From assembly GCF_002571385.2 (NCBI RefSeq), contig NW_019218160.1, forward strand, positions 243,581 to 307,580: DNA of 64,000 nt, written 5' to 3'. Shown piece after piece: positions 520-34,483 of the stretch (positions are counted from its first letter, which is position 1; each line of letters starts with the position of its first letter). The position numbers and the translations under genes were made by a program. The notes under the pieces are model-generated. The model was not told the DNA's origin. It ran no database searches and saw nothing but the letters and a program-made list of their open reading frames with translations. Source of the DNA: Stylophora pistillata. Lineage: Eukaryota.

Positions 520-830
520 CCATGACTTCGCATAACATCTCTAGATGGTCTCAAGAATTTCTTTAAGACTTCTGTCTTCAGTCTTGGGTCGTCAGCTTTT
601 ACAACAAAGATGGCACCATGCAGTCTTTGTGCAAATGATGGAGACTGATTCAGCTCCTGTGCTCGAGCTCCATCCTCCACAGAACGAAAGACGTTTTCAC
701 CAGGCTGGACTTTCCCGTACAAATTATTCTGAAATTCTACGTACTCGTTAGAAATGAAGTTGAAGAAACCCCTGACGTCTACCAAGCTGAAGAACATCTC
801 CGGCAGGTAGTCCTGGAACGTAATGGTCGT
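520..830 (-). pseudogene. IFI44-like GTPase exon fragment lacking the P-loop
   Basis: TITFQDYLPEMFFSLVDVRGFF..LYGKVQPG..SPSFAQRLHGAIFVVKADDPRL..RDVMRSHG, then donor GTAATT. Homologous to 62340-62480. Upstream sequence is unrelated or repeat-derived. Confidence 0.7.
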
Positions 831-1035
831 GTTTACACTGGTCGCCGATACGAAAGCTTGGCGGTGGTTTTTTTAAGGATGAAAGATGGTAGACTTAAGA
901 TTGTTTCGATGTGAGGGAGGACTGTTGAGTGAGGAGTGTTTTCGAAGAGTAAAATCGAAAAACGCAACGACAAAAACGCATTCGTTACTGGTGTATAGTT
1001 AAATCGTCAAACAGAAGCAAAGATTAAAGGCTAAA

Positions 1036-8614: not shown

Positions 8615-9271
8615 GCAAGAGGCCGATAAGGGCGGCTCAGTCGTTGTTTGGCGCACCGACCTCTACCAAAAAGAAGCTTTGCGGCAACTTTCTGACACCT
8701 CTTTTTATCAAAAGGTCGACAAAGACCTCACTGCCAGCAATCAAAACTCCGTCAAGAATACGATCAACCAACTCATAACTAAACAAGAATTGCCGGCCAC
8801 AGCAAAAAATCTCATCATAACCACTCCTAGAACTTCTCGTATTTACTTTTTACCTAAAATTCACAAACCTAACAACCCGGGTCGGCCCATTGTCTCGGCT
8901 TGCAGTTGCCCTACCGAACTTATCTCCAGCTATCTAGACAAAATTATGGCTCCCATCGTCAAAACTTTACCATCATATATTAAAGACAGCCAACACGCTC
9001 TTCAAATTTTTCGAGACTTTAATTTCCTTGGCCAAAACAAACTTCTTTTCACCATGGATATTACGTCTCTTTACACTGTCATTCCTAATGGCGAAGGCCT
9101 TCTGGCCCTTAAACATTTTTTTGATCAACGTACTGTTAAGGAACCTAAATCTGAAACACTACTACGCTTAGCCGAACTAGTGCTCACACTCAATTGTTTT
9201 TCATTCGGAAACAACTTCTTCAAACAAACCAATGGTGTAGCCATGGGCACCAAAATGGGACCTAGCTATGC
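8615..9271 (+). mobile_element. Penelope-like element reverse transcriptase fragment
   Basis: ADKGGSVVVW, YFLPKIHK..PGRPIVS, FTMDITSLYTVIP, GVAMGTKMGPSY motifs; truncated at the N at 9272. Confidence 0.92.
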
Positions 9272-10586
9272 NTTAGTGCGCCACTTGTGCTTGTACTGTT
9301 AGCAAGGCTTTACTGCTTACTATTTGGTTTTCGTCCCTCGTTATGTATGCCAAATTATTCATATCAGGACCCTACGTATGTAGCCTTAGCCCTCTTTCTC
9401 TGTCACGCAGCACTACGCAACGCTAGAATATTGTACAGGAAAGGAATTTTGTCTGATAGCAGTAAATCATTATGCACGATGACGAGGGCTGAGTGAGTTT
9501 TCGAGGAAGGCGGAGGAGTTAAGAGGGGCCGGCAGGGTCTCATGCTCCTTAGACACAGAATGAAGCTTTCACTTTTTCAAACTAATGAAGAAAACGTTTG
9601 AAAACAACATTTCTGCATGGGATTATTACTCTTTAGCGATCGCATTTGTTTTCTCCTCTCAATTTATGCAATGTTTTATAAATGCAGTGTACATGAAAGC
9701 TGGATTTTCGCACTCGAAGTATTTCGGTACCATGAATAAACGTGAAATTATCATGGTTAAAGCAGCAAAACTATTGATGCGTTTCGATAAAGGATTCTCT
9801 CCCAATGTGTATGACATATTATTATCCAACTACACTCCGTAGAGTATAAATGTCACGCGGTATTTGTGCTCCAGAGAACCAGTAGACAGGTTTCTCGCAT
9901 CGCGCAAGCGAAGAATTAGATTGAAAAAAAATGGACAATTTGGATCATATTTCTGACGACGAAGAGTCAGAATGGCTGGCAAATGAAGTTTATGGGATGA
10001 ATCGAAGGAAAAAAAAACAGCCAGACGATCAAGAAATTTCTTCATTTATTGAAGAAAATAGAAACAACAAGACATGGTTTATTTGAACTGTAGAATTACC
10101 TTAGTTATAAATTAAAATTATGTAAACAGTTATTTTTCTCCTTTTAAATCGGTGCAGAAAATTATTCCCAGCAGATACAGTGAGACGACAAAACCACGCA
10201 CAGACCAGTATCTATGAGCAATTCACACGAAGGTCACTCTGCGAGCTCTCAGCCAAGGAAAATACTAGAATTTACTTGAAATTCTTGATATTTCACTCGG
10301 CTGGTGCACGCCGTACCAATTTTTGTAAACTTCTGTCTTTAATATGAACCCTTAATATGAAGAAGGGGGAGCTTTTTCGAAAGCCAGTCGCAGTGTATTT
10401 TTAATGCATGATGACGTCGTGTTGGTTCTTACGACTCCGTTTCAAATGTGTTCTAAAAAAAGGATTTTCAATTGCTTTCCATTTCAGCCAAGATTTCCCC
10501 GGTAAGTCAAAGAGATACTTTATTTATTTATGTATTTCATCCACCAGGTGTACCGCTTGATTTTTTGATAACCAAGTCAGTTGCAA

Positions 10587-13500
10587 ATGGCCTCAAGGCT
10601 TCGCGGTTTGATTAAGTTTCCCTGGCGAGCAAAGAAAACGAAAGAGTCGGAGGAAGTTCTTTATGAAGAGGTAGGTAATCTTCTGTTCACATTGAGCACA
10701 TTTTGCCTCTTTGTCACGTGTTTAAATTAATTTGTTCTGTAAAATGGAATGAGTTATCAGCTCTCTTGGTATATTTGATGATTACCTATATATTTAAGAG
10801 CTTAATTCCCATTTAAAATTTTAACGTTGATTTTAATTACACTATATAAATTTTCCCACCCAGAATTTCAATATTTTGATATGCCTTTCTCGTTTCTGGG
10901 TCCTCCCTCTCCTCCTTGTCTCCTAAACACAAAATATGAAGTTAATCACCACTTAAAATAACAGTGCCGTAATTATACTTAGCGAATTTCAGACTGTAAG
11001 CTTGTGATTGTTATCAACTGAGAATCATATCTGGACAAAATATACTTTACATCTATCTGCAGAGAATTAAGCACACACGGTGTACCACTATTTAGAACTT
11101 CAATTTATTCGTCTGCAATAAAATAGTTTGAAAAGATTCATATGACAAATAACTGAAATTTGTGTTGAATATGGAAAAGGTAAGCATAGCTTTCAGTTCG
11201 AAGCGAAGGTCAACAAGGAAAACTTACATACCTGTATATCTCGCTGGAAGTCTTTGTTTAGCAGGGTTTGGCAAGCCGTCCTCGCGGGTTATTTTTGCCG
11301 GCTAACTTTCTTTAATACTTAACTTTCCGGTAGCTTGTGGAGGTTTACATATTTTTCTTTTTGAATTTTGGTATGTATTTTGACATTCAACCACACAACA
11401 GTTCACCTCATCTCAATTATTAGGAGTATAAGAAACTGATTTTAGAGAGGTCAAACAGGTCAACAAGGACAAACAATTTTCCTTGGATATTTGAGAGTCA
11501 ATTTTCAGCGTTTCGCTGGAGGCTCCAAAAACTTACGCACTCGTTCAAATAGCATAGATCGGACATGTGGTATCATTTTACATCTCTTCTGTTGATTAAT
11601 AGCAAAATATATAAATTCTGACCAAATAATTAAGAATTACGCTGTTTTGAAAATACCACACAAACAGCACTTTCCAAATTTGAGTGAGTGTGCTGTTCAA
11701 TTCCAAAACGCTTTTCTCAAAAGTGTAACGGGATCTGGAGTCCTCACCACTATCCATGTTTAGTACTAGGGCTGGTGTCCCGAAAACAACAAAAAAAGTT
11801 TTGGTAATTAGTCTTTTCGAGCTACGGGAGCTCGATGAACTTTACTAATTTTCTACGGTCAAAGTGCATATGACTTAATCTATGCAGATTTGTGTTACTC
11901 CATTTCTTGCTCAAAATCAATGTTTGAGGCAGTGGCTACTTTCAAAACTAGCATGGTTGTTTTTTTTTTTAAGTTGCGGATGTTCATAAATTCATCCAAA
12001 CTTTCCCCAAATCTAGCAATTACAAAAGTACAAATGAACATCTGTGTGACATTACGTTTAACTGTCTCATGGGGGCTAGAACATGTTGACAAAATGCCAT
12101 TAAGTTAGTTTTGACCGCTGTCATATGGTATGAAAAAACTAAAATTGCTGTCACCTAAAGACGTAGAAACGCTCATTCCAAATATGGCATTATGAAGAGA
12201 ACTTTATGTCTTACCAGAGCTTGAGAACATCTCCCCGAGAATGATCGAGAATCAGTCATGTGTCATGCTCTTTACTTTGAAAATGTCACGGATTCACATT
12301 TAACTACATCGCACGCAGTTACTTTAAAGTTGCCGAAAGAAATGGTTAATGTCAGGAGAGATACTTATTCTTTTTATTTCAGTTTACTCTAAAATTTGCC
12401 TTATCATGAAACAGAAAATGCAGTTTTATGGAAAACATATTAGCAACGCCGATTTCAGACAGAAATCTCGTCGGAATGTCCTTGTTTTTAGGTGATACAG
12501 TTAAATACAGTACAAGTATCATTCATTTCTATTGCCGCCTTATCATTTAGGGTAGCTCGATTAGCCGGGGCACCCTTCCTCCATGTAAACAGGCCCTTAG
12601 AGGTACAACTGCCTGCGTTTGCTCAATGAACGAAACTGAAAAACACTTGAAGTACAAAAGATAGACGGATTTAGTCAGAATATCACAACTTCAAGATTGA
12701 GGGGGAAGGAATGCAAATGTGGAGAGCTTATGGCATCAGGCAGGGAAGGCTGATTCCTTACCAAGATTAAGTCGTCAGGCCTCGTCAGTAAATGAAAAAT
12801 TATTTCCGCTCAAGGAGGTTCGGCTCCATAAGACGACACAAAGTAGTGTACCCCCTTTGGACAAGCACGTGTTCAAAGGGATTAACTGCACAACACACCT
12901 TCTAGTACTAGGCACGAGCAGTTTCGTGTTTCATTTCGCGTGAGTTTTCACTTTCAGCGTTCACCAGAGATTGTGTACTGTTTCGTTTTTCTTTTCAATG
13001 GGTCGTCAAAGTAGGTGTTCAGGTTGCAAAGAGTTAAAGTCTGCTCATGACTTCGGTCGTCCTGGAAAGTACTGTACCGGTCCAGGGGCCTGTTTCTCGA
13101 AGGTCCCGGTAACTTAACGGACCCGNNNNNNNNNNNNNNNNNNNNNNNNNNNNNNNNNNNNNNNNNNNNNNNNNNNNNNNNNNNNNNNNNNNNNNNNNNN
13201 NNNNNNNNNNNNNNNNNNNNNNNNNNNNNNNNNNNNNNNNNNNNNNNNNNNNNNNNNNNNNNNNNNNNNNNNNNNNNNNNNNNNNNNNNNNNNNNNNNNN
13301 NNNNNNNNNNNNNNNNNNNNNNNNNNNNNNNNNNNNNNNNNNNNNNNNNNNNNNNNNNNNNNNNNNNNNNNNNNNNNNNNNNNNNNNNNNNNNNNNNNNN
13401 NNNNNNNNNNNNNNNNNNNNNNNNNNNNNNNNNNNNNNNNNNNNNNNNNNNNNNNNNNNNNNNNNNNNNNNNNNNNNNNNNNNNNNNNNNNNNNNNNNNN

Positions 13501-16500: not shown

Positions 16501-19500
16501 CACACTCACTCAAATTTGGAAAGTGCTGTTTGTGTGGTATTTTCTAAACAGCGTAATTCTTAATTCTTTGGTCAGAATTTATATATTTTGCTATTAATCA
16601 ACAGAAGAGATGTAAAATGATACCACATGTCCGATTTATGTTATTTGAACGAGTGCGTAAGTTTTTGGAGCCTCCAGCGAAACGTTGGAAAATTGACTCT
16701 CAAATAAACAGTTTTCCTCACATCTTGTCGCCAAAAACTTGATAAAATAGCTTTACGAACCAAATAAATACAATTTTTGCTGATAGAATAAATCAAATAT
16801 CTCACAGTAAAAATTAGAGGGAATTCTGTGATCGGCCGAAATTCGAGTGGTCGGTTCTTACACGGACAGCCTCTTAATTTACAATATAAATTTAACCCAC
16901 CTAGAATTTCAATATTTTGATGTCTTTCTCATTACTGGGTTCCCCCTCTCCTCCTTGTCTCGTAAACACGAAATCTGAAGTTAAATCACCGCTTAAAAAA
17001 ACAGTGCCGTCATCATGCTTTGCGAATTTTTAGAATGTAAGCTTGTGATTGATATTAGCTGGGAAGTGTATCAGCGCAAAATATACTTTAAGCCTTTCTG
17101 CACTTTAAAATAAAAACCCCTAGGTGTATGCAGGGTACATGCTGCTTCGTCTGTGTGATTGTTTCAGTGGCCACTAAATATGTCTTAATTTGGATTCGAG
17201 GCACCTGAGCGAGTCGGCTAGAGTCTCGAATTGGAAATGATAAATTTTTTTCAGAAGACAGTGCTAAAGTTTTCAGAGGCCAACGGACTTTTATTTCTGC
17301 CTTTTCAGCTGTTTAAAGCAGAACAAGATGCTGCACCAGAAAAAAATGCTTCAACAGAAAGCAACGCTGCCCCAGGAAAGCATGCTGCTGAGGTAAGTTA
17401 GTGGTTTTCTTACCTAACTTAGAGTAGCAACCAAAAGAAGGTGTTCTGGCTGAAGAGTAACATGTCTGTACATATCTTGCCAGAGTTAATCTGACGGTGT
17501 TAAGATGTCCAAGCACTGGATGCATTTCAATAGTCATCATCAATAGTTATTTCTGCCTTTTCAGCTGTTTGCGACAAAAAAAAATGCTGGACCACAAAAA
17601 AATGCTGCACCAGAAAGTAACACTGCCCCAGGAAAAAATGCTGCTGAGGTAAGTAGGTGGTTATCTTACCTAACGTTGTGAAAAATAATGACCAATAGGA
17701 GGTGTTCTGGTTGAAGAGCAACATGTTGGTACATATTTACTTGGCACAGTAATTTGACGGTATTAGTGTGCCCAAGCATGGTATGCATTTCAATAGTGAC
17801 TTCATTTTCAGTTTTTAGTTGGTACCAGGAACACGATAAATGCCAGAAAAACGTCCACCTACTTAGATAAGTCAGCTCTTCAAACACAACCAATTTTTTT
17901 ATGCGACGGAATTTGGAGCTTGATAATCACAGAAATACGGTTTATTCCCCCTCCCAGAACACTTCAGAGAAGGCTATTTATTTCATCAATTTTGTACGTC
18001 ACTTGATGATAAAGATTTGTCCCTCTGCCCCACTTAAAGCAATTTTGAAGTAATTAGATCACATCGTTTGTGGTTTATACTTGCTGTGAGAGAACACTTT
18101 TAAATAGGTGCATACTTTTTATGCTGTATTCCTCTATTCAGAGAATAGTGTGGTCTCCTGGAACTAGAGTGATGGGAAAATATGCTTTCAAGGGGCGAGA
18201 CTCAGAGGTAAGCATTTTAATGATTTTATCAAAAATTGACTTGTGTTTGAGATAGTGGTGATGTTACATTGGTGACCAATTACTCACGCCGAAGGTTACA
18301 TAATTTTCTTTACGAGCCAGAAATTTCAAAAGTAATCAGTTATTTACACCCAGGAGAGCCTCTTTTTTTCTGTTTCATCATTTCATTAAGATTCTGAACT
18401 AGGAAAATATGGACAAGCCGAAAATTGAGCCCACCATTTTTAACTTGACTACTTGTCGTTTGTAAACGTAAAGGAACAAAGCTAATTTGCTAATTCTTCA
18501 AAGAAGCTTTCTCCAAGCATCTATTGATTGATGGTTCCTTTAGTTTATTGGAAGAAAACGTCAATAAAAGGGTTGGCTTACACAAGGGTACAATGTTATA
18601 ATCATTGACATCAGGTCAAACGGTCCAAATAATTGAAATGTTAATCTTTTATGTCTGTTCTATCTCAAGGATATGAGTTAACTATGAAAACAAATCACTG
18701 CTGGGTTAAAGGGCTGACAAATCTTCTTTGTCATTTAGGATCTGCCGTTTAAAAAGGGCGAAATTCTCATTATAGAAACAGTTACCAGGGTGAGTCCATA
18801 TGAAAACCTTGCAAAATTGTTCGGCATCGCTTATGGAACTGGGAAAAAGGTGTATTTTCGCGCTACCTCTTGTTTATGAGCATTACTTTCCGGTGAGACT
18901 CACCTTCCTCTGATTGAAAATTTGTCTGAAGTTTGGGTAGTAGCATGGCTGCCTACAAAATGACTCAATGAATTCGATAATGGGGTTTTGGTTTGTTTAT
19001 GTAGTCGCAGGTCATCAAGTTTAATGCTATGAGTGTAAAGGACCAGCGGATACTGGTGTTTCGGACTACAGACTGTCTAACAGGCGTATACACGAAATAG
19101 AATGTTCATGCCGTCCGGGACTGAAACCTAGACCTGCTGTACCGTTACTGGGCGCTTTATTAGCTGGGCCAAACAGTCGGCAGATTTATTTGCATGGTTT
19201 TTGTGGTCTCGAATATATTAATGTTCTTATAATCAATAACAAATTAATATATCGGAAAAGGTCTTAAAGATGTGAGGTAATTTCAATTTGGGAATCTTTG
19301 ATGAATATTGTTACGAGCGTGTCCACGAGAAAATCGGGAAGGGGGCGATAAACCACCTGCATTTTTTGCATAATTAATTAGTCAACTTTGCATTGCTGCT
19401 GTGACAAACTGAAAATCCATCTGCAAATTCAATCAACTGGGTTGTATTCTTTATTTATCAGACTTCAAGAAAACTGAATTGTTTTAACTTTTTCATTTCA

Positions 19501-22500
19501 TTTCTTCCCTTACCTCTCGCTTAAGAAAAGACGACTTTTTTCTAGTTTTGACAAAGTCGAAAAAATAAGGATATTTTAAAGCCCGATATCTCCGATGACC
19601 TACCACTTCTGATCATTATTCCTATATGGGCAGTGAAAGCCATCACTGGACTTCCAAAACACCCTTATTTGTTAACTCATGATACTTAGTATCTGTGCCA
19701 AATCGGTGATTTGAGGTTTAACGCTCCTGTCCGGTTCTGCCCGTTTTTCTCGGGGACACACTCTCAATTTTGTCTCATCTCTGTTTTCTGTAGGGTCACA
19801 ACTGGTATGGAGCAGTTAATAGTGAGGGACGAAAAGGATTCATTCCTGTCAACTTTGTTGAGAAATGTTTTACGTTCCGCGCTGTTGAACTCGAACCCGT
19901 GTTGTAAGTTAATTTTCTGAAAGCCTTCAGAAGAGTTAGATCTCAACGTTTGCAACTTGCCAAGTTTCCTATAATGCTGCAGAGTTTCAAAATTGTTTCT
20001 ATAATTGTTCACCTTGATAGTTTAGTATTGCAGTGAACAGGAGATTAGCAGGTAGACATGTATTAGGAAAATGCAACTGTGTTACTGTGTGGTACAAGCC
20101 ACAACAGCAGGTGATGGATCGACTGTATTTAATGTGCATCTCGGATCGTAATTTTAATGGTTCATAACGAATTGAGTGTATTTTCGTCTTACCTATACAA
20201 ATGAAACCGTGGAGGCGCGGTGGCCTCATGGTTGGTGCGCTCGACTCCGGATCGAGTGGCTCGGGTTCGAGCCCCGGCCGGGGACATTGCGTTGTGTTCT
20301 TAGGCAAGACACTTTACTTTAGGCAAGACACTTTACTCTCACAATGCCTCTCTTCACCCAGGTGTTTAAATGGGTACCGGAAAATTTAATGCTGGGGGGT
20401 AACCCTGCGATGGACTAGCATCCCATCCAGGGGGGAGTAGAAATACTCCTAGTCGCTTCATGCTACAGAAACCGGAGTTAAGCACCGGCCTGATGGGCTA
20501 CTGGCTCGTAAATAGACTTTACCCATACAAATGAAACAGTTTAGCAACGCATTTTTCATGAAAACAAACCTTCTAGATCATAAAGACTGAGAAGCGTCAG
20601 AGAGGTTTGGAATTATTGCGCTAAATGCTCTATACGAAAAAAAAAGTAAAAGTTAAAGTTCGCAAACGGTTCGTGAACGATTCTTAAACAATTTAGCTGT
20701 ATCAAGTTTGGTCGATTAACTTGGCTGTTATTCGACGAAGCGAAAGGTATGAAAATAGAGTGGAAGCCCATATCTGCGTGATAGTTGATGAGTATTCACC
20801 GAAGTGTAGGTGGCACAAGGTTGGATATTGTATTGAGCCGTGAAGCGGCGAGGGAAATATCCATCGCCAGCCACCGACACTGTAAATAGTATATACCAAA
20901 AAAGTGAGAAAATATAGCACGGTTACAATTTATTTGGACTCAAATCCTGCGCAAGTTCCTGGGAGGTGAAAAGGAAAAAACATAAACCCCTCCAGGCGAC
21001 TGGTATGTCACCTCTACTGTCTGTGGCTGAGATATTGTCCGAAAAATGAATATTTGGTTGAGAAGCGAAGCTTCGAGTACAAATGTGATATTATTGAGGA
21101 CAATCCCTCAGCCAAAGACATCATCACCCGACAGGTTTATATATATTTTAATAACCTGCACATTAATTTTCACGCCGGGTAAAGGCAGCTCGGAAAAAAA
21201 GCTATTGTTGATCTTTTTTTGGGTGTTTTCTGGAGCAGCATTAGCAACCAGCGTTTAAATGTCACTATCACTGGACTCTAAAAAACGAAATTGTTTTTCC
21301 TCCATGTAAAATATTACGGATGACGGGTAAAATTCTTCATCTGGCTTTTTTTCTGCAAACTTTGTTTCATTTCGGAAACAGAAAAAATCTCGACGCAAAC
21401 GGGAGTCGTTGCGTGATACATGTCTGGGATTTTGACATGAAGTAGCCAATAAGATCGCGCAAGAATTCGTGGGTGGGTTTTAAGAAAGGATATTCGGAGT
21501 TTGAGTAGCCAACCAGAGCACACTTTCAAAGCTATCCACAGTTTAATTGTAAACTAATGAAATTACCCGTTGCTTCCGTACTCACGGACGTTTCATACTC
21601 GGTCGATTCCTCTTCAGCAACGATCGTTGGTACACAGTCGATTGAATCGTTTCGTACCCATGCAAAAGCAATTAAGTCGAAGCCAGTTTTCTCGCCAGTA
21701 AAAAGAATAGAACTTGTTTTTTATCCAGAAGCTAACCAATTCGCACAGGCTTCAATCGCGAACTTTCAATTTGTGTTTGAAGTGGGCACGGTGAAGGGGC
21801 TACGCGTATTGTAGAGGCCGGAAGTGATAACAAGGAAGACGGTGATGCCAACGAAGACGATGCGAAATAAACAGATGAAACTGTATCTATTTTATCACCT
21901 ACCGGATTGCGATCTTTTTTTTTTTCACTTAATTGTTTCTGATAAGTTTCATGATCTTTTCAAACCTTCACGCGTGGTTACAGCTTGATTATCAATTCTT
22001 AACTGGAAGCTATTGTTTGTTTTTGTTTTGATCAAAATCACAGATCGTTTCATGGGGATATAAGCAGAAGAGAGGCTGAGATGCTTCTTAACCCTCGCGA
22101 AGACGGATTGTTTCTGATAAGAAACAGTGGCCACTATAAGGGGGACTATGCGATTTCGGTCTGGTATGTTTGTAGTTTGTCGTAATTATAAAGTGAACTT
22201 TTTGTATCTTCGAGAAATATTAAAGAGACGAACGCTTCGCTTATCGCAAGGTGTCACTGGGGAACTCTTTGATTAAAGATTCTTGGAAACTTGGTCCTAA
22301 TAACTCCTTGGTAGCACGTAGTCAATACTTAGCTCCTTAAAGTGATTCTTCCGAAGAAAAAGATGTCGTACAATTTTTTTATACTTACCTTAATGTTCCT
22401 ACCAATGTCTGTTTCGAAAACTACAATAAAAGAGATAGGCCACCTTGGTTGCTTAAGAGATATAATAGGCTGGTCTTACCCTATATATGCTTGTGCTGCA

Positions 22501-25500: not shown

Positions 25501-28500
25501 TTGTTTTTATCGTGTCTTTTTTTTTTAACAGGAAACTACAGCATAGGAATATTGTGACATTATTAGGAGTGTCATCGACCGAAGACCCTTTCTACCTTGT
25601 GACAGAGTTTTGTGCAAAGGTAAGCGTTTCAGGGCCATGGAAAAACTTGCGTTTGATCAAACAGTTGCAGGTCAGTTGAGTTGCACCTTCAGCTACATAT
25701 CCACAACACCCAACAATCAAAAAGCCTCGGGAATTTAACGTCTTCTAAGTGTGCACCAAATTGTAAAGTTGTGCTGATGTAAGATGTAGTGATCCCTATT
25801 TCCTCGAGGCAGTTCAAAACTTTAAAATTATTTCGAGACTTAAAGAAAAAAAGCGTCAATGCATGACGATAGATGTTCATGAAAGATTAATGAGCAGGTT
25901 TTAGTTGCAGTTGAGAAGTTTGCTAGTATTAGGATAGGTGATAGGATGAAATGTATAATTGACCAATCAAATGTCCGATTGTGCCAGAAGCGATACGGAG
26001 TCAGTATCGAGGTCTGTTTCATCTGATTTTATTACTCATCAAGAGTTTTAGAGTAGTGTTGCGTTTCAAATGATTGTAACTATTTCCCATATTTTCTCTT
26101 TTTTTACATATAGGGAAATTTATTGGAATTCTTGTCGGGAAGAGGCTCAAGTACAATCCAGGAAGATGATCTTGTGAACGTTGCTCAGTAAGGAATTTNT
26201 CTTCTGGGAAAGTGATTCTTGTCAAATAAAGAATGCAGAGCAAGAGACTAGCCTTTATTCTGAACCATCAAACGGCCAAAAAATTACACGTGAAAGTGGC
26301 CCAAAGGAAGATACTATAGGAATGATTTCTTAGTTACCATAATTAATTCATATAAATGTTCTGTTCCACAGGGATGTAGCTCGCGGTATGGAGTATTTAC
26401 AATCCAAAAATGTAGTACACAGGTAAAATGTCTCGCCACAAATTTTTGGAAGGCATGAAAAGATGAGCCGTGATAAGGAATTGTGGGAAACTTGGATTCT
26501 TAGTTGAAAGGGAACCAAGAAACACAGTTGAATAGTACACGCGTTTTGATTGGTTCTTACTTGTGATCTATTGGAAAACAGACGTATGGGTGACATCACC
26601 ACTTACCGATTTTCCTGGGTGTGATATGAAACAAAAAGATTCTATATTGCCGTGCGTCTGTTCAGTAAATATATCAAAGAAAACGTCTAATGTCGTAAGA
26701 ATATCAGACATAATCAGCTGCGCCTAGTGTTCCATTTTTCTGCTCTTGCCAAATGTTGACCTCATCTGTGTTCTATGACCGAACAGTCGCACCGCAACTT
26801 GGAATCTATTGACTATAGTATGGAAAATCAAACCAACCGAGTGTTACAGAGAATGACTGAAGATAAGTGTCTAGAAATTTCTAAGTAAGAATATTACACG
26901 TCACTTAATAGTGTTACGGTATTTTCTCAACCGACAGAAAGTTACAACTCGTACCAACTCAACTTCTTTATTAACTGACGTAATAACTACCGAGCGATAC
27001 CAATAACTAGTACGATAACTATTCTCTTATGTTAGAGCCCTCTATAAAACTATAATGTCAGTGAACTACTGCACAACCCACAGTTCGCTTCAATCATCCT
27101 TATAACTTAACGATGTCCACAAAACTCTTCTCAATATAGCCTTCCACACGGCTGACAATTCCAGTAACAACACTAGCTCCTTTGGGCTCTTCACGACAGC
27201 ACTTACTCACTGAAAAAGGACTAACTTTAAGCGATCGCTACTCCTTATATATGTTTACAAAATGTTCTAGAACATTCTAGGAATCTGTAATACGACTATT
27301 TTTAGTATCATTACATCACTATTGCATCCTAACAAAATATGCTGACTAAGGGTTCTAGAAAGTTTCATTAAGAGTTCTTGATGAGTCAGCATGACTAACC
27401 GTTCCAGAAACTTCTTCAGTTCTATTTGTAGTAATTATGTAACACAACGCTCTCCATACCAGTAGAGCAGTCGAATTTGTAGGATTGTAGTGTTTTTTTT
27501 ATTGGTTGAATTAAACCGTAACACGAGTACATTTTGGGACTTACGGGTATGAGCAATGTTTTGAAAACGAATCAAAACATTACAAGTGGCCATTTAACAC
27601 CAAATATTCGAGAAGTTCATGCGATTTTCTTTTTGGTTTATTACACCCTCAACAAAACTCTCCCAACGAAAATTGTTCTTTCTTTGAATTGATCATTAAA
27701 AAAACTTGAGTTGAAATAGTGATACGCAAACGATGTCCTCGAAAAGGGAAAGTGCTCAGAAACGTTAAGGATCGTCTCACCAGTAATGATCACCTGGTAT
27801 GTTTTTATCACCTGGTATGTAAAAAAGCGCACTATAAATCAATAAATTATTAAATTATTATTATTAGTAGTAATGTAATCTACAGCATTACTGATAAAAA
27901 TTCTGAGCTATAGAGTAATTGTTTTTTGCTCAGAGTCAAATTGAGTGGGATATGTCATCAATACTTGCAGCTTTGCGTATCCTAACTATGTCCTCTTCTC
28001 ATATTTACATCTTCTCACTCCAGGGCGTTAATGGCGAGGAACATTTTGATAGATGAAGATGGAACAGCAAAGGTAGGTCAACCAAGGGTCATAACATTAT
28101 CACATAATGAAAACGCGATTATCTCGGGAGTAGTTGTTTTCACCTTTTATTCAGGTCTCCTTTATTTGGCAGGATTGTGAATTGCAATTGTCAGTCATCA
28201 TTCAGCTAGCGTGGAGCTGTTCTGCGATATAAAATAAAGAAATAGCTTGACTTCCACAGCTGTCATCTATTCTGTGATAAGATTGAAAGAGTACAACGTT
28301 ACTCAGATTCCACTAGTTTCATTTAAACGTCAAATTACGAAAGTTGGCTTCTGCTTAGTGAGGCTTTGAGAGCTTTGATTTATGTGCTTAAATGCCGTTG
28401 GTGTTTAGTCGCCTTTCCTTCACTGTTAGGTGTCTGAGTTTGGACTTGCACAGATGTACAATTCAAGTTCTGAGCGGAAAAATACTTCTGACAAGTGGGC

Positions 28501-31500
28501 AGCTCCAGAAGCAATCAGAGAGGGGGTACAGCGTACTTAGAGCTTTTAAGCATAATTAAAAGCACACACGTAGTAAAATGTGCAGATACATAATGTATCA
28601 AAGATACATAATTTCTAAATCAATCTTTAGTGTTGTTGTTGGTTTCGGTTTTTTCTTCTTTTTTATCTTTTTAATTGTTTGTTTGTTTGTTTGTTTTGGT
28701 TTATTCATATTTTGTGATGGAGGTCTTTTTGACGGTGAATAAGACTTTTTATTCTATGAGTCACGGGTGTTATCAAACAGTTTGTCATTTTACAGTTCAA
28801 TGAGCCAGTAACGTTCAAATTTGAAGTTTAAATCAACCAGTCACATTCAAAGTTGTGGTTTAAATCAACCAATCACAACCTTGGTTTCTTTTATTGAAAA
28901 TTTTCTCTTTGTTTCATCATTTGGCTTTGTTTCTTTACTTTGAAATTGAAATTTTTATGATCTATTGGTAATAAGACTTCGTGTCGTCCAGTTGGGTTTT
29001 TTAATTATACTCGTGGTCAACAAATCGAACTCCCGCTGGGCGGTCGTTCGATTTTGTTATTACTGGTATAGACCGAATTAAACTCCACTCGGTCCTATTA
29101 CCATTATAAAAGGTGTATACCATAACTGGAATCCAGGCGTCAGCGAATGATTTGTCCAGATTTATCGATTTTGTTTATGTCTGCAGATATTTTCCCCCCA
29201 GTCCGATGTGTGGAGTTATGGTGTTTTATTATGGGTGCTTTTTTCGTTTGGTGAAAATCCATATTCTGAGCTGGTTAGTGTTAAGGTGGATTAATGGTTA
29301 CGATCCGATTCAAAGGTCCTTTTGCTTTCTCGTAAGCTGGTAACCTTAAAACATATGATTTAGAATCACGTACTTTGTTTTCTTGTGTTTTCTAACTGAT
29401 GTTAAAAAACCCAAATTTGACATTACAGGAAAGAAAAGCTAACTCATGCGTGTAAGTCAAAGCTCATGGTCTAGACAGTACTAAGAAATAAACAAATTAA
29501 AGTTTTGTTGTGGTGTTTTTATTATGGAATTTAAAATAAGGATGCAACTAGTTGACAGTGGTTGCTTTTAGGTTATTTGCGCGGCTCTTCAAATTTAATT
29601 AATTAGGTTTTGGTTTTAGCCTGCAGACCAACTAGTCGACAAGATCGAAAAAGGGTACCGAATGAAATGTCCTAAAGCATGTAATACCGTCATCTATGGT
29701 ATGATGAGCAACTGGTGGAATATTGATCCAAGGGAACGTCCAAGTTTCAAAGAGATTTATAAATTATTGGCCAACTATTTTTACGGTATGTAATGTCATG
29801 TAACTAAACTGTGCCATCAATTTTTTTCCAAAAACTGAAATCTTTTTTACAATGTGAAAAATTTCTGAACAAGCTTCTAAGGTCAATATTTTTATGCACT
29901 TTTGTTTAGCAACTTGTCGGTGATAAGTCAATTTTCTAAGATTTATTTTACGTATTCATCACTTCATCATGACTTTCTTCGGATGTTGTATGAAGGTTAA
30001 TGTTTTGTACCCCAATTGCCGCTTCGTGGTTCATTAGTTCATTGTAACTATATCGCCAGTGCATTTGATCAATTAATTTTTTCATGTTAAGAATTTAGGG
30101 GTATTTGCCATTGTTTTGCCGTATAAAGATAAGGTAACGTTGTAACTTGAATTAGGTAGGGCTTACCCTAACCCACTTTAACCTACTTTAAAATGTGGAT
30201 TAATTCAAAGTTATTTATGCAAATAGATGAGGTGCCTAAAGAAATTCGTGCACGAGGACGTTTGGCTTTAAAGGCCTACAAAAAGGCTCTGTCAGAAGGG
30301 AAGACATGTGTCAAACGCGTGCCAATCATGTTAATTGGGCAGGACCGCTCCGGAAAAACCAGCCTTGCGAAATCTCTCAAAGGAGAGCGATTCAACTTGG
30401 AGGAAGNGACACTCCAGAGCTTAACAAAATGGTGGTCCTTGACGCTCAGTGGTTGATTGATGTTTTCAAGGAAGTTATAACTATTAGGCCATTTGACAGC
30501 AATGAGAAAAAATTTGAAGAGCTTTGGCTAAGGCTTGAAAACGAAGGAATCTTGGAGGAACCTCTTCTAGAACATGTTTGGGGTTCTCTATATCACAAAG
30601 AGGACACTTGCCAGGGTCTCATTGCGATCATGGAGAAGTTCAGTTTGCTTTGCTCTTGGCCCTTTTTGGATGACTCATGTAGTAAGCAGTACCTAGTGCC
30701 TTCCATGTTAATGTCGCACCCACCAGAAGAAATAATGGAGCTGGTTGTATCTGCAGAAATTCCCCCTCTCTTTATCAAATTTGAATCTGGACAAGTTCCA
30801 CCTGGCTTGTTTCCTCGATTGGTGCTGCAGTTTTTACAGTGGTGCAAACAAGAATGTACAAGCCCAGATCACCCTCAGCTTTACCACAATTTTGTCAGAA
30901 TTTACGATTCCAAAGAGGAAAATTGTTCCGTAATCCTCCTGTGCCATATGTCGTCAATAGAGGTTGTTGCTCACAGAGGTGATGACGGTCATGAGGTAGC
31001 ACACTGTTCAAAGTCAGAGATAACTTCGCCTGTGGAGAACCACCACGACGCCTTTGCTTGTGCAGTATTGAGGCAACTGAAATTGGTGCTTGAGTCCATG
31101 CGAAGGGAATTCTGTTGGCTACAGAATATGAAATATGAAATAAGTTTCTTGTGCCCTGTTTGTTGTCGAAGAGGTGCAGTCAGCTACTGCCGAACACATC
31201 GGAGAAAAAATTGCAAGCAAGAAGAATGCTTCCACTTCTGGCCCGAGTCAAAGCTGTTCAGCGACAAGAAGATGATCTGTTGCACCAGATCTGAAACTGC
31301 TAAGATGAACAGAGTTTCGTTGAAAAACTTCGAGCCTTGGTTTTCTCCTATGAGAAATCAGGTAAATGATTTTAGATAACACAATACTTTCTTTGGAGGT
31401 GAATTTCATTTTGATGAGATGTACAGAAAATGTGTTACGTGTTTGTCCTCAAAAGATAAGACGAGACCGTAAATGTTTAACTACTTGACTGAAACCGTCA

Positions 31501-34483
31501 GAGGACAGGTCCATAAAGACAAATAAGGCACCTATATTTTGGTTCGGTTGTAAAAGTTAAGTGCTTCGGAATATTACTTGTTTTCCCATGCAAAATGAAC
31601 AAAGTTATCCTTTTGTCACACATGCCTAAGGCAAGTATTGTAATTAAGGAAATGCATCAAACGTACAATGGTTAAAAAACGTTGCATTCCCATGATGGTG
31701 CTTAATTCTTTTTCCTTTTTTTAACAGTTTGCTGTCGATAAATGTGGTGACGGAAACTTAGCCTCTGTTGAAGGTAACATTACTGTATATGTTGTTTGAT
31801 GGTTCTCTCTAGAAAACGGAATAGGCAAAAAGTCCTTCATTTGACTGTTAAAAAATACATTTCATTTGACAAACCTTCAGACTGAAGCAAATATTGCCCA
31901 AAACTTTTCATCTTGTCTTTATTTTAAGATGGTGAGGAAAATTTTTCTGCCAATGAGTTTTTGCGAATCCGTTTAACACAGCGGCGAGACGACCAAAATA
32001 TTTCACCACAATTAAAGGAGAGTCTGCAGCTGGAAGAAGCCTTTCCAGAGACGCTGGAGTCTGATTCCAAACGTGGTGATATGGTGCAAAACCTGGATAA
32101 AACTACAAGTGAGTGCATCTTAAGCTTGCTTGTCCTTTCTGTTTTATTAGAAAAAAAAATAACAATGATCACTGCTATAAGAATATCAACATTTTAACCT
32201 AACATCATGAAGAAAAACAAGGGAAGGTTGAAGGCCATAGTTAGATTGCAAAACTGCCAATGTTCTGAAAATATCCGTGGCAGTTCTCCAAAGACATTAC
32301 GCAGTGAATAAATTATTTGAATTATCATTGATTGATGACTCATCTTTTCCTTTTGTTTAACCTAAGCAACCACCGAAGTTTCCCTACCTGATAATGTTAA
32401 GCAATCCCTCTTGTCAGCGTCGTGCAATGCCAACGAGATTGTTCAACAACTGAAGGAGAACCTGCAACTGGACAAAGACGCTCTTGAGCAGCCAGACCCT
32501 GACACCAAGATAATAATCCGTAATCTGGCACAGAAAGCAAAATATCTAAGGAGACTTGATGTCTTTGAACATTTAAGAGAGATTGTACCTGCTGGAACTA
32601 CTGGTTAGTTGTTTGTTCTTGCGAAATCTATCTTGCCGTACCCTTACGTATCCCATAGTTACCTGGAACATGAAACTATGGGATACGTGAGGGTACTGCA
32701 GAAATCAAATCAAAATTATAAAGAAAACATAAATCTTTATAAATTTTTACTTTGACAACCAACTGCAAAGCTGGTATTTGACCTGAAAAACTACATTTTC
32801 TGATGACTCTTTCTTTATGCGTTGGCAGACTCACTAACCGCGTCTAGAAAATAGAATGACCAGTGGTATGTTCAAGGTGTTCGGTTCGCGNTTGTAATTC
32901 CAGTCTGGAAGGCTCTAAGTGGGGGATGGTTGGCCATTTGTATGGTTATTCCAATCAACTCAGTGATTGGTGGATTCATTTGAGTATATTCATTTAATCG
33001 ATCACATTGTCTAATTACAACCCTACAGATTTGTAAATGAAATGGAGTTCTTCACCCAATCACGTTGGAAGAAATTGTAAACTTAAGGTTATAATCTTTA
33101 ATTTAAAAGAGACGATGCAGATCTCTATTTCGAATATTGCTATTGGCGTGTCATATAGTTTTCGATATAGCATGACTATGTGATAATTTCTGGTAGAGGA
33201 TTGTTATATGCATTGAAGTAAGATGACATAGTGGAGATGTAGTAATACTGTACTGTTTTGAGAGTTGCTGATTCATATAGACTATATGTAAAGTTAATGA
33301 AATGAAATTCCTCAAATGGTACGTCTATGAAAGAACCTAGAAGTTTCAAAGAGAAATATACATCCATAAAAAGTCATGCCGTCGATGAGATTTAGTTTCT
33401 TATCTTATAGTATTTTTACACTGCTAGTATCAGATGACTTTGATTTTATCTTGCAAATGTAAATTCATATTTCGTTTAACAGAGGTACTCCCGTAACAAT
33501 TGACATAAGTACAAAATTCGAAGAGTAATGTTGTCTGAGGCGATACATGAAGCTTTTAACCTACTTTGAATTAATATTTGCGTTTCAATAGTTGCACTCA
33601 CCTTTCAAAATTATGATTTCGTAAACGCTTGCTATAGATCACAGCGGTTTACGTTTGAAAGCAAAGTAAGGCTTGGTTAATCTTCTAGAGAAAGAAGCAA
33701 TTCATTTCTCGCCTCTTTGAAGAACATTAGTTTCCTATAGGTTTGCTGTAGTTTGCTACAAATAAACGTTTTGGAGTGTTTATTATTTGTGGTGTTAACT
33801 TGTTTTGTTATGATCGCCATTACTTCCTATGCAAATAATCCCTACAAACTATATCTGAACGCTAGAGCCAGTCTTATTTCAATGGTTCCCAATATAGCAC
33901 GCAAAGTCAATCAAAGTCAGAATCGTCCTGGAAACACCGACATCTTAGAAACTACTTTAATAGTTTTAACAATTTGACTTAAAAGTCAAATAAATGTATG
34001 GATTCATCAGGGCAATAGGCTTATTAGAGAAATCATACACTCTAATTTTCAGTGTAACAGGAACTTTTGAGTGAGTGTGGTATGCATTCAGCTTAACTCA
34101 TTTTCAGTAAAATGAGAAGAATGTGGCAGCGAAATGGCCTGTAACTTACGCAAGCGTAAAGGCTTACCACTGTGGTTATTTCAATTAAGGTCCCATTCTG
34201 AGTTTGAAATGTCAGTTCTGAAATCCACCTCCAAGTTAACCCAACTATTTTTATTATCAAAATAGTTAAAAAACAAACCTTTGATTTAGGTGGCGATGAA
34301 TGGATGGAGCTTGCAGAAGGACTGGGACTGACTCCTCAAGAGATTCGTTTTCTTGACAAGCGTACACTGAACCCAATGGACGCGGCTCTGTCTTTTATTG
34401 CAAAGCAGCGCCACTTAAGCGTGGGCGAGCTGTACGAATTGTTTATTGCACATGACTTTCCTATGTTAGCTGACCTATTGTAA
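10587..34483 (+). CDS. Multi-exon chimeric gene: SH3-SH2-CSK-type tyrosine pseudokinase fused to ROC-COR-helical linker-death domain (ROCO)
   Basis: Hand-spliced, phase-compatible exons: 10587-10670, 17309-17392, 17565-17648, 18142-18207, 18739-18789, 19794-19903, 22044-22163, 22636-22738, 23508-23613, 24237-24302 (GC donor), 24993-25098, 25532-25619, 26114-26187, 26372-26422, 28024-28072, 28430-28525, 29187-29273, 29620-29785, 30227-31361 (N at 30407), 31728-31773, 31929-32108, 32367-32603, 34290-34483. No stop codons within these exons. The first three exons and the terminal exon assignment are the least certain. Confidence 0.8.
12998..13084 (+). mobile_element. Possible tyrosine-recombinase retrotransposon (DIRS/Ngaro) gag N-terminal fragment
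   Basis: [29 protein letters not shown] (CxxC..H..C knuckle), interrupted by a GGGGCCTGTTTCTCG MITE end and an N gap. Family assignment from memory only. Confidence 0.3.
15820..16090. mobile_element. Non-autonomous Penelope-related fold-back repeat with hammerhead-like cores
   Basis: Arms 15820-15908 and 15944-16032 are inverted. Core gct CCGACGA agggctaaccctc GAAA cg TC agc at 15939-15972. 13-bp TSD TAACTTA(A/C)TGGAA at 15807 and 16091. Confidence 0.7.
17290..17800 (+). repeat. Tandem duplication of an 84-nt exon with its flanking intron (~256-bp unit)
   Basis: TATTTCTGCCTTTTCAG|CTGTTT...GCTGCTGAG|GTAAGT repeated at 17309 and 17565, with similar downstream intron sequence. Confidence 0.88.
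18142..23613 (+). CDS. CSK-type SH3 and SH2 domain exons of the chimeric gene
   Basis: [19 protein letters not shown]|[17 protein letters not shown]|[22 protein letters not shown] (SH3); [40 protein letters not shown]|[10 protein letters not shown]...[17 protein letters not shown]|[16 protein letters not shown] (SH2). Closely follows recalled CSK sequence (WPSGTECIAKYNF, DLPFCKGD, GLFLVRES, KVEHYRI, DADGLCTRLIKP). Confidence 0.9.
20208..20524 (+). mobile_element. tRNA-derived SINE, full length
   Basis: tRNA-like head with A box (TGGCCTCATGG) and B box (GGTTCGAGCC); conserved central domain (GGCAAGACACTTTACTCTCAC..CCCAGGTG..AAATGGGTACC); internal 19-bp tandem duplication; 13-bp TSD ATACAAATGAAAC at 20195 and 20525. 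Confidence 0.88.
24237..29785 (+). CDS. CSK-like tyrosine kinase domain exons, predicted pseudokinase
   Basis: GWEINR..IRRGDFG|[27 protein letters not shown]|[21 protein letters not shown]|GNLLEFL..|[17 protein letters not shown]|[16 protein letters not shown]|[18 protein letters not shown]|[18 protein letters not shown]|..GYRMKCP..RPSFKEI. Most intron positions match those recalled for CSK. Confidence 0.9.
26912..27443 (-). mobile_element. Possible solo LTR
   Basis: TGTTAC...GTAACA ends; minus-strand TATATAAGG (~27245) followed by AATAAA (~26970); no TSD found. Confidence 0.4.
28964..29107. repeat. Short palindromic MITE-like repeat
   Basis: TGGTAATAAGAC...GTCCTATTACCA termini with an internal hairpin (AACAAATCGAAC..GTTCGATTTTGTT). 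Confidence 0.55.
30227..31361 (+). CDS. ROC (P-loop GQDRSGKTS) and COR exon; most of ROC lost at the single-N gap at 30407
   Basis: ORFs 30193-30456 and 30306-31379 are the two sides of the N. Both align with the intact paralog at 51864-54124 (VPKEI..RG..A..KA; IGQ.RSGKTS; TPEL..VVLD.QWLI.VF; LVPSMLMS; FESG.VP.GLF; F.CP.CC; CKQEEC.HF). Confidence 0.9.

What the first reader, a model, noticed from the sequence alone, without database searches (positions are those of the whole stretch)
10587..34483. CSK-derived SH3-SH2-pseudokinase fused in frame to a ROC-COR-death-domain module: candidate integrated-decoy receptor in an animal
Seen: the last kinase exon (29620-29785, ..KLLANYFY-G) has no stop, ends in a phase-1 donor (G|GTATGT), and 441 nt later a phase-1 acceptor (AAATAG|AT GAG GTG CCT) opens the ROC exon. 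All ~18 upstream exons are open. Established: CSK is normally a stand-alone SH3-SH2-TK that inhibits Src-family kinases. The well-known metazoan ROCOs are LRRK1/2, MFHAS1 and DAPK1 (CaMK-type kinase, ankyrins, ROC, COR, death domain). Plant NLRs use integrated decoy domains and pseudokinases. I do not recall an SH3-SH2-TK-ROC-COR-DD architecture. Inference: a duplicated CSK was captured as the sensor or bait of a GTPase-switched death-domain receptor that reports on phosphotyrosine signalling or on effectors targeting it. This would converge on the DAPK1 layout.
Basis: partly seen in the sequence, partly recalled or inferred. Interest (0 to 1): 0.92.

Follow-up and report, generated by a model that had tools for sequence, protein, structure and literature searches.

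The report
Coral CSK-pseudokinase fused to ROCO death-domain protein
In the coral Stylophora pistillata, a duplicated and catalytically dead copy of the kinase CSK is spliced in frame onto a Roc-COR GTPase protein ending in a death domain; this is one member of a large coral gene family that swaps its front end, so it is interesting but not a one-off.

Summary
RNA from four runs of four studies joins the last kinase exon (end 29785) to the Roc exon (start 30227), in frame. My 24-exon model gives one open frame of 1547 codons ending at 34481-34483.

- **CSK origin:** all 14 intron positions and phases match the canonical CSK gene found on another contig.
- **Dead kinase:** the expressed sequence reads HRA for HRD and EFG for DFG.
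- **Hidden gap:** the single N at 30407 stands for about 1238 bases. RNA contigs bridge it in frame, so most of the Roc domain is missing from the assembly.
- **Death domain:** Pfam is marginal, but a fold search gives death domains as its top hits.

The architecture is not unique in kind. This genome has at least 78 COR matches. Related coral proteins carry PDZ, TPR, Cullin, GT4, HEPN, Src-like SH3-SH2 or OSR1-type kinase domains in front of the same Roc-COR-death core. One Oculina protein joins a CSK-like kinase lobe to Roc in the same register, and Nematostella has a pseudokinase-Roc-COR-death protein.

The decoy reading remains inference. The 5' end, the SH3 and SH2 exons, and the link across the 13126-13883 gap have no RNA support here. 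I found no paper describing this architecture.

The parts
10587..10670 (+). Candidate first coding exon (ATG, 28 codons, phase-0 GT donor)
   Evidence: Sequence only. It is 100% identical on contig C1155. No RNA evidence. An alternative in-frame Met at 17237, in an extended exon, is also possible.
13126..13883 (.). Assembly gap inside the putative intron 1, within a repeated element
   Evidence: Both flanks match a second copy of the element at C376:240968-243579, in the same order and orientation. No coding exon abuts the gap. The gap's letters were not looked up.
17309..17648 (+). Two tandem 84-nt exons (17309-17392, 17565-17648) encoding a low-complexity Ala/Pro/Asn/Lys repeat
   Evidence: AG/GT sites in phase 0. 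They lie in a 256-nt direct repeat. Both are present on C1155. No RNA evidence.
18142..19903 (+). SH3 domain in three exons (18142-18207, 18739-18789, 19794-19903)
   Evidence: Pfam SH3_2, E 0.0015, on the third exon. Intron positions are shared with the CSK gene on C43.
22044..23613 (+). SH2 domain in three exons (22044-22163, 22636-22738, 23508-23613). The phosphotyrosine-pocket Arg (FLIRNS) is kept.
   Evidence: Pfam SH2, 46.6 bits. The best PDB hits are CSK SH2. Intron positions are shared with CSK.
24237..29785 (+). CSK-derived pseudokinase in nine exons: 24237-24302 (GC donor), 24993-25098, 25532-25619, 26114-26187, 26372-26422, 28024-28072, 28430-28525, 29187-29273, 29620-29785
   Evidence: Pfam PK_Tyr_Ser-Thr on exons k3, k7 and k9. 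RNA joints run from k4 onward. Motifs read IRRGDFG, VTVKK, HRA and EFG. Exon lengths and phases match CSK on C43.
27515..27796 (+). Alternative exon spliced to k6 (27796|28024). An in-frame Met at 27786 would give a short form: kinase C-lobe-Roc-COR-death.
   Evidence: The joint is seen in X12 and X14 contigs. The frame was checked.
29786..30226 (+). The 441-nt intron joining the kinase to Roc. If retained, the frame stops after two codons.
   Evidence: Homology to the CSK-less paralog on C523 starts only at 30222, 5 nt before the acceptor.
30227..31361 (+). Roc-COR exon. The P-loop is at 30229-30405. The N at 30407 hides about 1238 nt. The rest of COR-A and further COR sequence run 30408-31361.
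   Evidence: Pfam Roc (17 bits) on the P-loop piece and COR-A (30.3 bits, profile positions 61-143) on the second piece. RNA contigs bridge the N with 1238-1240 letters. The paralog open frame 51843-54236(-) passes both Pfam cut-offs.
31728..32603 (+). Three linker exons (31728-31773, 31929-32108, 32367-32603)
   Evidence: RNA joints 31361|31728 and 31773|31929, plus a loose end at 32108 that runs into the next exon. Frames checked.
34266..34483 (+). Last exon: divergent death domain and stop codon
   Evidence: Pfam Death, 21 bits, below the 22.6 cut-off. The model has pLDDT 79. The top Foldseek hits are FADD, p75NTR, TNFR1 and RIPK1 death domains, TM 0.66-0.72. The splice from 32603 is inferred from the frame only.

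Best explanation
This is a real, expressed fusion gene of Stylophora pistillata. It encodes a protein of about 1547 residues, in this order:
1. a short low-complexity N-terminus;
2. an SH3 domain;
3. an SH2 domain;
4. a catalytically dead kinase domain;
5. a Roc GTPase;
6. a COR domain;
7. linkers;
8. a divergent death domain.

**Origin (shown).** The first half is a DNA-level duplicate of the coral's own CSK gene. Its last exon lost the stop codon and gained a phase-1 donor. That donor splices onto the phase-1 acceptor that members of a large coral Roc-COR-death family carry in front of their big Roc-COR exon. This is exon shuffling. The family is an expansion with a constant core and exchangeable N-terminal domains.

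**Mechanism (inferred).** The SH2 and SH3 domains keep their binding residues. Together with the dead kinase they act as a non-catalytic targeting or sensing module for phosphotyrosine and proline-motif ligands. The Roc-COR unit acts as a GTP-controlled conformational and dimerisation switch, as in other ROCO proteins. The death domain passes the signal on by death-fold oligomerisation towards cell-death or immune adaptors.
For: - Junction and downstream splicing are seen in RNA of four studies. A single open frame runs through 24 exons.
- HRA and EFG are in the spliced RNA sequence.
- All 14 introns sit at the same position and phase as in the CSK gene at C43:620944-627928. That gene's last exon runs to a stop instead of a donor. 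C43 is the closest relative in the genome, and its N-lobe exon hits only CSK in the PDB.
- Roc and COR-A pass the Pfam cut-offs in the paralog. The death fold is supported.
- Family: at least 78 COR matches in this genome. Phase-1 acceptors sit just before the (V/I)P.EI motif in four copies inspected (window +, window -, C376-upstream, C523).
- N-terminal domains of relatives: NACHT, DED-Macro, CARD-FN3, CAP-Gly, PDZ, TPR, Cullin, GT4, KH, MIT, HEPN, SH3-SH2 and OSR1-type kinase.
- Oculina P0286 aligns without gaps across the kinase-Roc junction, 59% identity over 143 residues.
- A second copy with the same order of parts lies on C1155.
- COR evolves under constraint between the two copies (dN/dS 0.45).
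Against: - No RNA evidence was collected for exon 1, the SH3 or SH2 exons, or k1-k3, so a single full-length transcript is not shown. Contigs are short and cannot phase isoforms.
- X12 and X14 use an alternative exon (27796|28024) that would give a short form without SH3, SH2 or the N-lobe. X14 also skips exon k7.
- The Roc G-domain body is not in the assembly. Its integrity is inferred from length and frame only.
- The SH3/SH2 exons show a nonsynonymous rate about equal to intron divergence, which would also fit relaxed constraint.
- The CSK docking motif for Src-family substrates (RSRGR in human CSK, from my memory; RTRGR in coral CSK) reads SGRGS here. A CSK-like grip on Src kinases is therefore doubtful.
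- No functional data exist.
Confidence: 0.62

Rival explanations
1. Integrated decoy. The dead CSK copy mimics the real CSK or its partners. Pathogen or symbiont effectors that attack CSK/Src signalling hit the copy instead, which flips the Roc-COR switch and fires the death domain. This would be analogous to integrated domains in plant NLRs.
For: - The domain is kept as an intact fold but is dead catalytically.
- The family carries many different host signalling domains on one constant core.
- Nonsynonymous changes are in excess in the CSK-derived part between the two copies: 49 against 7 synonymous, dN/dS 2.0. For the SH3c+SH2 exons Fisher p = 0.049.
- The locus is highly polymorphic in RNA of different colonies.
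Against: - No effector, no interaction and no immune-induction data exist.
- The dN/dS signal is borderline and fits neutral drift as well.
- The core is a ROCO, not a STAND NTPase. No ROCO protein is known to me to work as a guard.
- Many of the N-terminal domains may simply be adaptors.
Confidence: 0.2
2. Conjoined transcription without a joint function. The working products are separate: a short Roc-COR-death form from an internal start (alternative exon 27515-27796), and perhaps a stand-alone SH3-SH2-pseudokinase. The long fusion would be a by-product of a CSK duplicate landing upstream.
For: - The alternative joint 27796|28024 in X12 and X14 has an in-frame Met.
- RNA depth is about twice as high on the Roc-COR exon as on the kinase exons.
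- Retention of the 441-nt intron would end the frame after two codons.
- The Oculina gene models start within the kinase C-lobe.
Against: - The k9>Roc joint is present in all four runs, and the intron has essentially no coverage.
- No polyadenylation signal lies in the intron.
- The k4>k5>k6 joints occur in X1 and X24, the same runs that show k9>Roc.
- Even the short form keeps kinase-derived sequence fused to Roc.
- The junction is conserved in Oculina.
- Contig depth is a poor measure, and paralogs at 95% identity may add to it.
Confidence: 0.12
3. A decaying, non-functional duplicate: the kinase motifs are broken because the copy is on its way to becoming a pseudogene.
For: - Catalytic residues are lost.
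- The nonsynonymous rate in SH3/SH2 is near the intron divergence.
- A neighbouring family member has a stop inside its death domain.
Against: - There is no stop or frameshift in 24 exons and 1134 visible codons.
- All splice sites are intact and used.
- The second copy is also open in every exon visible.
- Fold-critical residues of the kinase, SH2 and SH3 domains are kept.
- The gene is expressed in four studies.
Confidence: 0.05

Closest known systems
DAPK1 (death-associated protein kinase 1)
   Same: One polypeptide holds a kinase-fold domain, then Roc, then COR, then a C-terminal death domain.
   Different: DAPK1 has an active CaMK-type Ser/Thr kinase with a calmodulin site and ankyrin repeats, and no SH3 or SH2. 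Here the kinase is tyrosine-kinase type, derived from CSK, and lacks the catalytic Asp. The fusions arose independently.
Nematostella vectensis A7RN40 / XP_001639132 (P0065), an uncharacterised 'death domain-containing protein'
   Same: It reads pseudokinase-like domain, then Roc, COR-A, Death. The start of its Roc exon carries the same VP.EI..RG motif. It also lacks the Lys, HRD and DFG motifs on inspection.
   Different: It has no SH2. Its kinase is only 28% identical over 107 residues and is not evidently CSK-derived. Its COR is 31% identical to the window's.
Oculina patagonica gene models ACROYT_G027446 (P0286) and ACROYT_G037669 (P0279)
   Same: P0286 has a CSK-like kinase C-lobe that runs into Roc in the same register as here, followed by COR and a death-like tail. 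P0279 has SH3-SH2 directly before Roc-COR.
   Different: P0286 lacks SH3, SH2 and the N-lobe in its model. The SH3-SH2 of P0279 looks Src-like (ALYDY motif; my own reading, not a tool result), and P0279 has no kinase. Neither model shows the full SH3-SH2-kinase-Roc-COR-death order. Both are unreviewed predictions.
CSK (C-terminal Src kinase)
   Same: SH3-SH2-kinase order, 14 shared intron positions with the coral CSK gene, and an activation segment of CSK length.
   Different: HRD reads HRA, DFG reads EFG, and the first Gly of the G-loop is Arg. The substrate-docking Arg residues are mostly lost. The last exon has no stop and is spliced onward.
Plant NLRs with integrated domains, and plant or animal pseudokinase decoys
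   Same: A constant switch-plus-output core carries variable, sometimes catalytically dead, copies of host signalling domains.
   Different: The switch here is a Roc-COR GTPase, not an NB-ARC or NACHT ATPase. No guard function has been shown. The resemblance is one of logic only.
LRRK1/2, MFHAS1, and Dictyostelium Roco proteins (pats1, roco4; names that NCBI gives to Stylophora relatives)
   Same: The Roc-COR tandem.
   Different: Those proteins have LRR or ankyrin repeats, an active kinase after COR, and no death domain.

Membership tests
ROCO proteins | A Roc (Ras of complex) GTPase domain | tested here: inconclusive
   Only the P-loop piece is assembled (Pfam Roc 17 bits, cut-off 27). The rest lies in the 1238 nt behind the N at 30407, which RNA contigs bridge in frame. 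The paralog at 51843-54236(-) scores 34.2 bits, above the cut-off.
ROCO proteins | A COR domain directly after Roc | tested here: met
   COR-A profile positions 61-143 match, E 4.6e-7, 30.3 bits. The score is below the 35.3 cut-off because the start of the domain lies in the gap. The paralog scores 63 bits, and the family search gave 467 relatives.
CSK family (by descent) | SH3-SH2-tyrosine-kinase order, closest relative is CSK, and shared gene structure | tested here: met
   Domains. All 14 introns are at the same position and phase as in the C43 gene. C43 is the best match in the genome, and its N-lobe exon hits only CSK in the PDB. The last exon alone does not discriminate between Src and CSK.
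Active protein kinases | Catalytic Asp of HRD, Mg-binding Asp of DFG, and the GxGxxG loop | tested here: not met
   HRA, EFG and RxGxxG in the model and in the spliced RNA sequence. The beta3 Lys, the alphaC Glu and APE are kept. The protein is predicted to be a pseudokinase.
Death domain superfamily | A six-helix death fold, recognised by profile or by structure | tested here: met
   Pfam Death gives 17.5-21.4 bits at the same C-terminal place in the window's last exon and in 4 of 6 relatives scanned; all are under the 22.6 cut-off. Nematostella P0065 scores 35.7 bits. The AlphaFold model has pLDDT 79 and five helices. The first 20 Foldseek hits are nearly all death domains, TM 0.57-0.72, with weak E values near 0.2. 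Helix 1 is not in this exon.
DAPK1-type ROCO | CaMK-type active kinase, calmodulin site and ankyrin repeats before Roc | tested here: not met
   The kinase is CSK-derived and dead. No ankyrin match was found in any exon scanned.
Integrated-decoy immune receptors | The integrated domain is the target of an effector, and its modification activates the receptor | not testable with these tools
   Only indirect signs exist: variable N-termini in the family and dN/dS of 2.0 with borderline significance.

The most novel reading that the evidence does not exclude
The coral Roc-COR-death family would be an animal counterpart of plant NLRs with integrated domains. A GTPase switch with a death-domain output would display copies of host signalling hubs: CSK, Src-like SH3-SH2, OSR1-type kinase, PDZ and others. 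This gene would guard phosphotyrosine signalling against effectors of pathogens or symbionts.
Probability: 0.2. Interest if true: 0.9.

Novelty: new variant of a known kind. Interest (0 to 1): 0.6.

Why it matters
ROCO proteins such as LRRK2 and DAPK1 are studied as single genes. Here a reef coral has dozens of them, built on one Roc-COR-death core with exchangeable front ends. One of these front ends is a dead copy of a central regulator of Src kinases, and it is expressed.

This gives a concrete, testable case of exon shuffling creating candidate immune or cell-death sensors in an early-branching animal. It also points to a link between phosphotyrosine signalling and death-fold signalling. 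If the front ends prove to be sensors or baits, it would extend the integrated-domain principle from plant NLRs to a different switch class in animals. That would bear on coral immunity, symbiosis and bleaching biology.

Tried and rejected
- **Classifying single exons against the PDB.** The SH2 exon puts CSK first by a small margin. The last kinase exon puts Src before CSK, and that of the canonical gene puts Abl level with CSK. The window's own k2 exon found nothing. Single exons are too short, so I relied on intron positions instead.
- **Search of 1.84 billion representatives with the COR exon.** No representative has a CSK-like front. The best match is 58% identical, so this gene's own product is not in that library.
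- **P0297 and P0298.** They looked like hits but are unrelated proteins with four kinase domains.
- **The look-up of encoding contigs for Oculina P0286 and Pocillopora P0441.** Neither is on record, so I could not inspect their upstream DNA.
- **Rfam on 9000-36500.** Nothing found. The very deep RNA signal at 26850-27249 stays unexplained.
- **Four literature searches.** No paper on this architecture or on a coral ROCO expansion. The nearest are Kaur et al. 2021 (PMC8195603), on expansions of death-like and TRADD-N proteins in marine invertebrates, and the Aplysia immunome paper (PMC9334734), on ROCO fused to TIR and death-like domains.
- **Whether the RNA contigs come from the C1155 copy.** Only 7 of the 17 variant letters in the COR exon that I compared match C1155. 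The samples therefore carry other alleles, and I cannot say whether C1155 is a paralog or a divergent haplotype.
- **Joined protein.** The spliced protein was not sent to any search, family or structure tool. Those searches were made exon by exon, by reference. The joined model was built only inside scripts, for frame checks and for local pairwise comparison with proteins already fetched.
Full report
**What the window is.** The window is G000:C376:243581-307580 of a 398-Mb coral assembly. An NCBI protein of Stylophora pistillata (P0425, named 'pats1') sits on a 320,863-nt contig, which is the length of C376, and it maps at 99.9% identity just upstream of the window. The genome is therefore Stylophora pistillata.

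**The observation.** Exon 29620-29785 has no stop and ends G|GTATGT. After 441 nt, AAATAG|AT GAG GTG CCT opens the next exon. I laid RNA of four runs from four studies on 26250-32240.
- The joint 29785|30227 is present in contigs of X1, X12 and X14, and in five raw reads with five different starts in X24.
- The intron has no depth in three runs.
- The strand of X24 fits a + strand RNA, assuming a standard stranded library.
- The same data show the joints k4>k5, k5>k6, k6>k7, k7>k8, k8>k9, COR>mini-exon and mini-exon>linker 1, plus a loose end from linker 1 into linker 2.

**The hidden gap in the Roc exon.** The assembly has a single N at 30407 with a frame change across it. Contigs of X1 and X12 carry 1238-1240 letters between 30404/30406 and 30408. 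Adding 1238 to the 178 coding bases before the N gives 1416, a multiple of three, and the next codon then starts at 30408 in the COR frame. So about 413 codons, the body of the Roc domain, are missing from the assembly but present in the RNA. The paralog open frame at 51843-54236(-) has the same spacing and passes the Pfam cut-offs for Roc and COR-A. I did not read or fill the missing letters.

**The exon model.** From splice sites, the RNA joints and homology, I built a model of 24 exons.
- It gives 1547 codons (413 of them unknown) with a single stop at 34481-34483.
- One donor (24302) is GC. With it the G-loop exon joins the next exon exactly as in CSK. The only GT donor nearby would delete a beta strand.
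- The model was joined only inside scripts. No search tool saw the joined protein.

**The gap at 13126-13883.** It lies in my first intron. Its flanks (12552-13125 and 13884-15874) match, at 95-98% identity and in the same order and orientation, a second copy of a repeated element at C376:240968-243579, where the flanks are 231 nt apart. The gap is thus inside an intronic repeat, not in coding sequence. However, exon 1 (10587-10670) and everything up to kinase exon k3 have no RNA support here, because the single reads call covered only 26250-32240. An in-frame Met at 17237 is an alternative start.

**CSK origin.**
- Searching the genome with the SH2 exon and the last kinase exon finds a compact gene at C43:620944-627928(-) as the nearest relative.
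- Projecting each of my 15 exons from SH3 to k9 onto that gene finds an AG acceptor at the predicted base in 14 of 15 exons (the other is 3 nt off) and a GT donor at the predicted base in all 14 internal exons. Exon lengths are the same or differ by one or two codons.
- Its last exon has no donor and runs to a stop.
- Its N-lobe exon hits only CSK in the PDB.
- The window gene is therefore a DNA-level duplicate of CSK whose terminal exon became an internal one.

**Pseudokinase.** The spliced sequence reads VVHRALMARN (HRD to HRA), VSEFG (DFG to EFG) and IRRGDFG (first glycine of the loop lost). The beta3 lysine, the alphaC glutamate and APE are kept. These codons lie in RNA-supported exons, and no variant letters are listed there. 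The SH2 keeps FLIRNS and the SH3 keeps its Trp and Pro. The Src-docking motif of CSK (RSRGR in human CSK, from my memory; RTRGR in coral CSK) reads SGRGS here.

**Death domain.** Pfam scores the last exon 21 bits, against a cut-off of 22.6. Similar sub-threshold matches occur at the same C-terminal place in 4 of 6 relatives scanned. The Nematostella relative scores 35.7 bits. A profile of five paralog exons weakly hits the p75NTR death domain. An AlphaFold model (pLDDT 79) finds FADD, p75NTR, TNFR1, RIPK1, DR3, ankyrin and MyD88 death domains as nearly all of its first 20 Foldseek hits, with TM 0.57-0.72.

**The family.**
- The COR exon has at least 78 matches in this genome, about 20 of them full length.
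- The window alone holds three members: this gene, a minus-strand one at about 50154-54236, and the tail of an upstream one at 3072-4790.
- The four family copies I inspected each have a phase-1 acceptor just before the (V/I)P.EI motif.
- Annotated relatives in Oculina, Montipora, Acropora, Orbicella, Pocillopora, Actinia, Nematostella and echinoderms carry very different domains before, and sometimes after, the core. These include NACHT, DED-Macro, CARD-FN3 with a C-terminal TIR, CAP-Gly, PDZ, TPR, Cullin, GT4 glycosyltransferase, KH, MIT, HEPN, Src-like SH3-SH2 and an OSR1-type kinase with its C-terminal domain.
- This is the pattern of a lineage-specific expansion with a constant core and variable flanks. 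That pattern has been described for death-like and TRADD-N proteins of marine invertebrates (PMC8195603).

**Relatives of this particular fusion.**
- Oculina P0286 aligns without a gap across the junction, from the kinase C-lobe into Roc, at 59% identity over 143 residues. Its kinase piece resembles coral CSK.
- Pocillopora P0441 is a 78% identical ortholog of the Roc-COR part, but its model is cut at the 5' end.
- Nematostella A7RN40 is pseudokinase-Roc-COR-Death, with a kinase that is not clearly related.
- No protein with the complete SH3-SH2-kinase-Roc-COR-death order was found. Four literature searches found no paper on it either.

**History of the locus.**
- Contig C1155 carries the same order of parts, colinear at 88-99% DNA identity. 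Its kinase is hidden in a large gap, and its tail resembles the upstream paralog instead.
- The CSK-less copy on C523 is 92-95% identical from 30408 to 36349, introns included. Upstream, its homology reaches back only to 30222 (80% over 30222-30396), which is 5 nt before the acceptor. This places the breakpoint of the capture in that intron.
- Between the window and C1155 copies, the CSK-derived exons have 49 nonsynonymous and 7 synonymous differences (dN/dS 2.0). Fisher p is 0.09 overall and 0.049 for SH3c plus SH2. COR has dN/dS 0.45. The nonsynonymous rate is close to the intron divergence, so diversifying selection and relaxed constraint both fit.

**Isoforms.** X12 and X14 join an alternative exon ending at 27796 to k6. 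An in-frame Met at 27786 would then give a kinase C-lobe-Roc-COR-death form, like the Oculina model. X14 also skips the 96-nt exon k7, which keeps the frame. Retaining the 441-nt intron would stop the frame after two codons, but the intron is not covered and has no polyadenylation signal.

**Verdict.**
- The decoy function is a reasonable but untested hypothesis.
- The thing is a new domain combination within a known kind (ROCO proteins), and a member of a large, apparently undescribed coral expansion.

Noticed in passing
window 50154-54236 (-): A complete family member on the other strand. It has a 798-codon single exon with Roc and COR-A above the Pfam cut-offs (51843-54236), a linker exon (51099-51482) and a death-domain exon (50154-50345). 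Its upstream exons were not sought.
   Followed up: partly
window 3072-4790 (+): The tail of another family member (linker exons and death-domain exon). It has an in-frame stop inside the death domain at about 4617. This is probably a broken copy, or the stop is a sequencing error.
   Followed up: partly
window 26850-27249 and 26545-26575: RNA contig depth reaches 45,000-148,000 in an intron, with many loose ends. A short stretch is shared with something very highly expressed elsewhere. There is no Rfam match.
   Followed up: partly
window 32892-34176 and 34731-36023: A 1.3-kb direct repeat (93% identical) flanks the death-domain exon. The single N at 32891 sits exactly at its edge, so this may be an assembly join.
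   Followed up: no
G000:C1155:15925-52966 (-): A second CSK-like plus Roc-COR-death locus, with 100% identical exon 1 and SH3b, 59-81% identical SH2 exons, and a tail taken from another paralog. It is either a paralog or a very divergent haplotype. RNA of other colonies shows yet other allele mosaics.
   Followed up: partly
window 459-872 (-), 38670-39760 (-), 62142-62594 (-): Repeated open frames with a P-loop (GPAGSGKTS) and a shared D(T/V)RGFF motif. They may be another GTPase-like gene family in the same cluster. There is no significant Pfam match.
   Followed up: partly
window 41298-42349 and 45446-46454 (+): A tandem pair of unknown genes, 79-83% identical at the DNA level, with open frames of 125-199 codons and no Pfam match.
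   Followed up: partly
window 9000-9299, 58424-58888 (-), 60914-61741 (-), 63474-63998 (-): Transposon remains: a reverse-transcriptase-like frame (by eye, not scanned), a GIY-YIG nuclease domain (Penelope-like, my reading), a hAT dimerisation domain and an ALKBH8_N-type match. There is a microsatellite-like array at 48732-49520.
   Followed up: partly
window 13886-14839 (+): An open frame right after the assembly gap, with faint C2H2 zinc-finger signs. It is part of the repeated element that also lies at C376:240968-243579, and is not part of the gene.
   Followed up: partly
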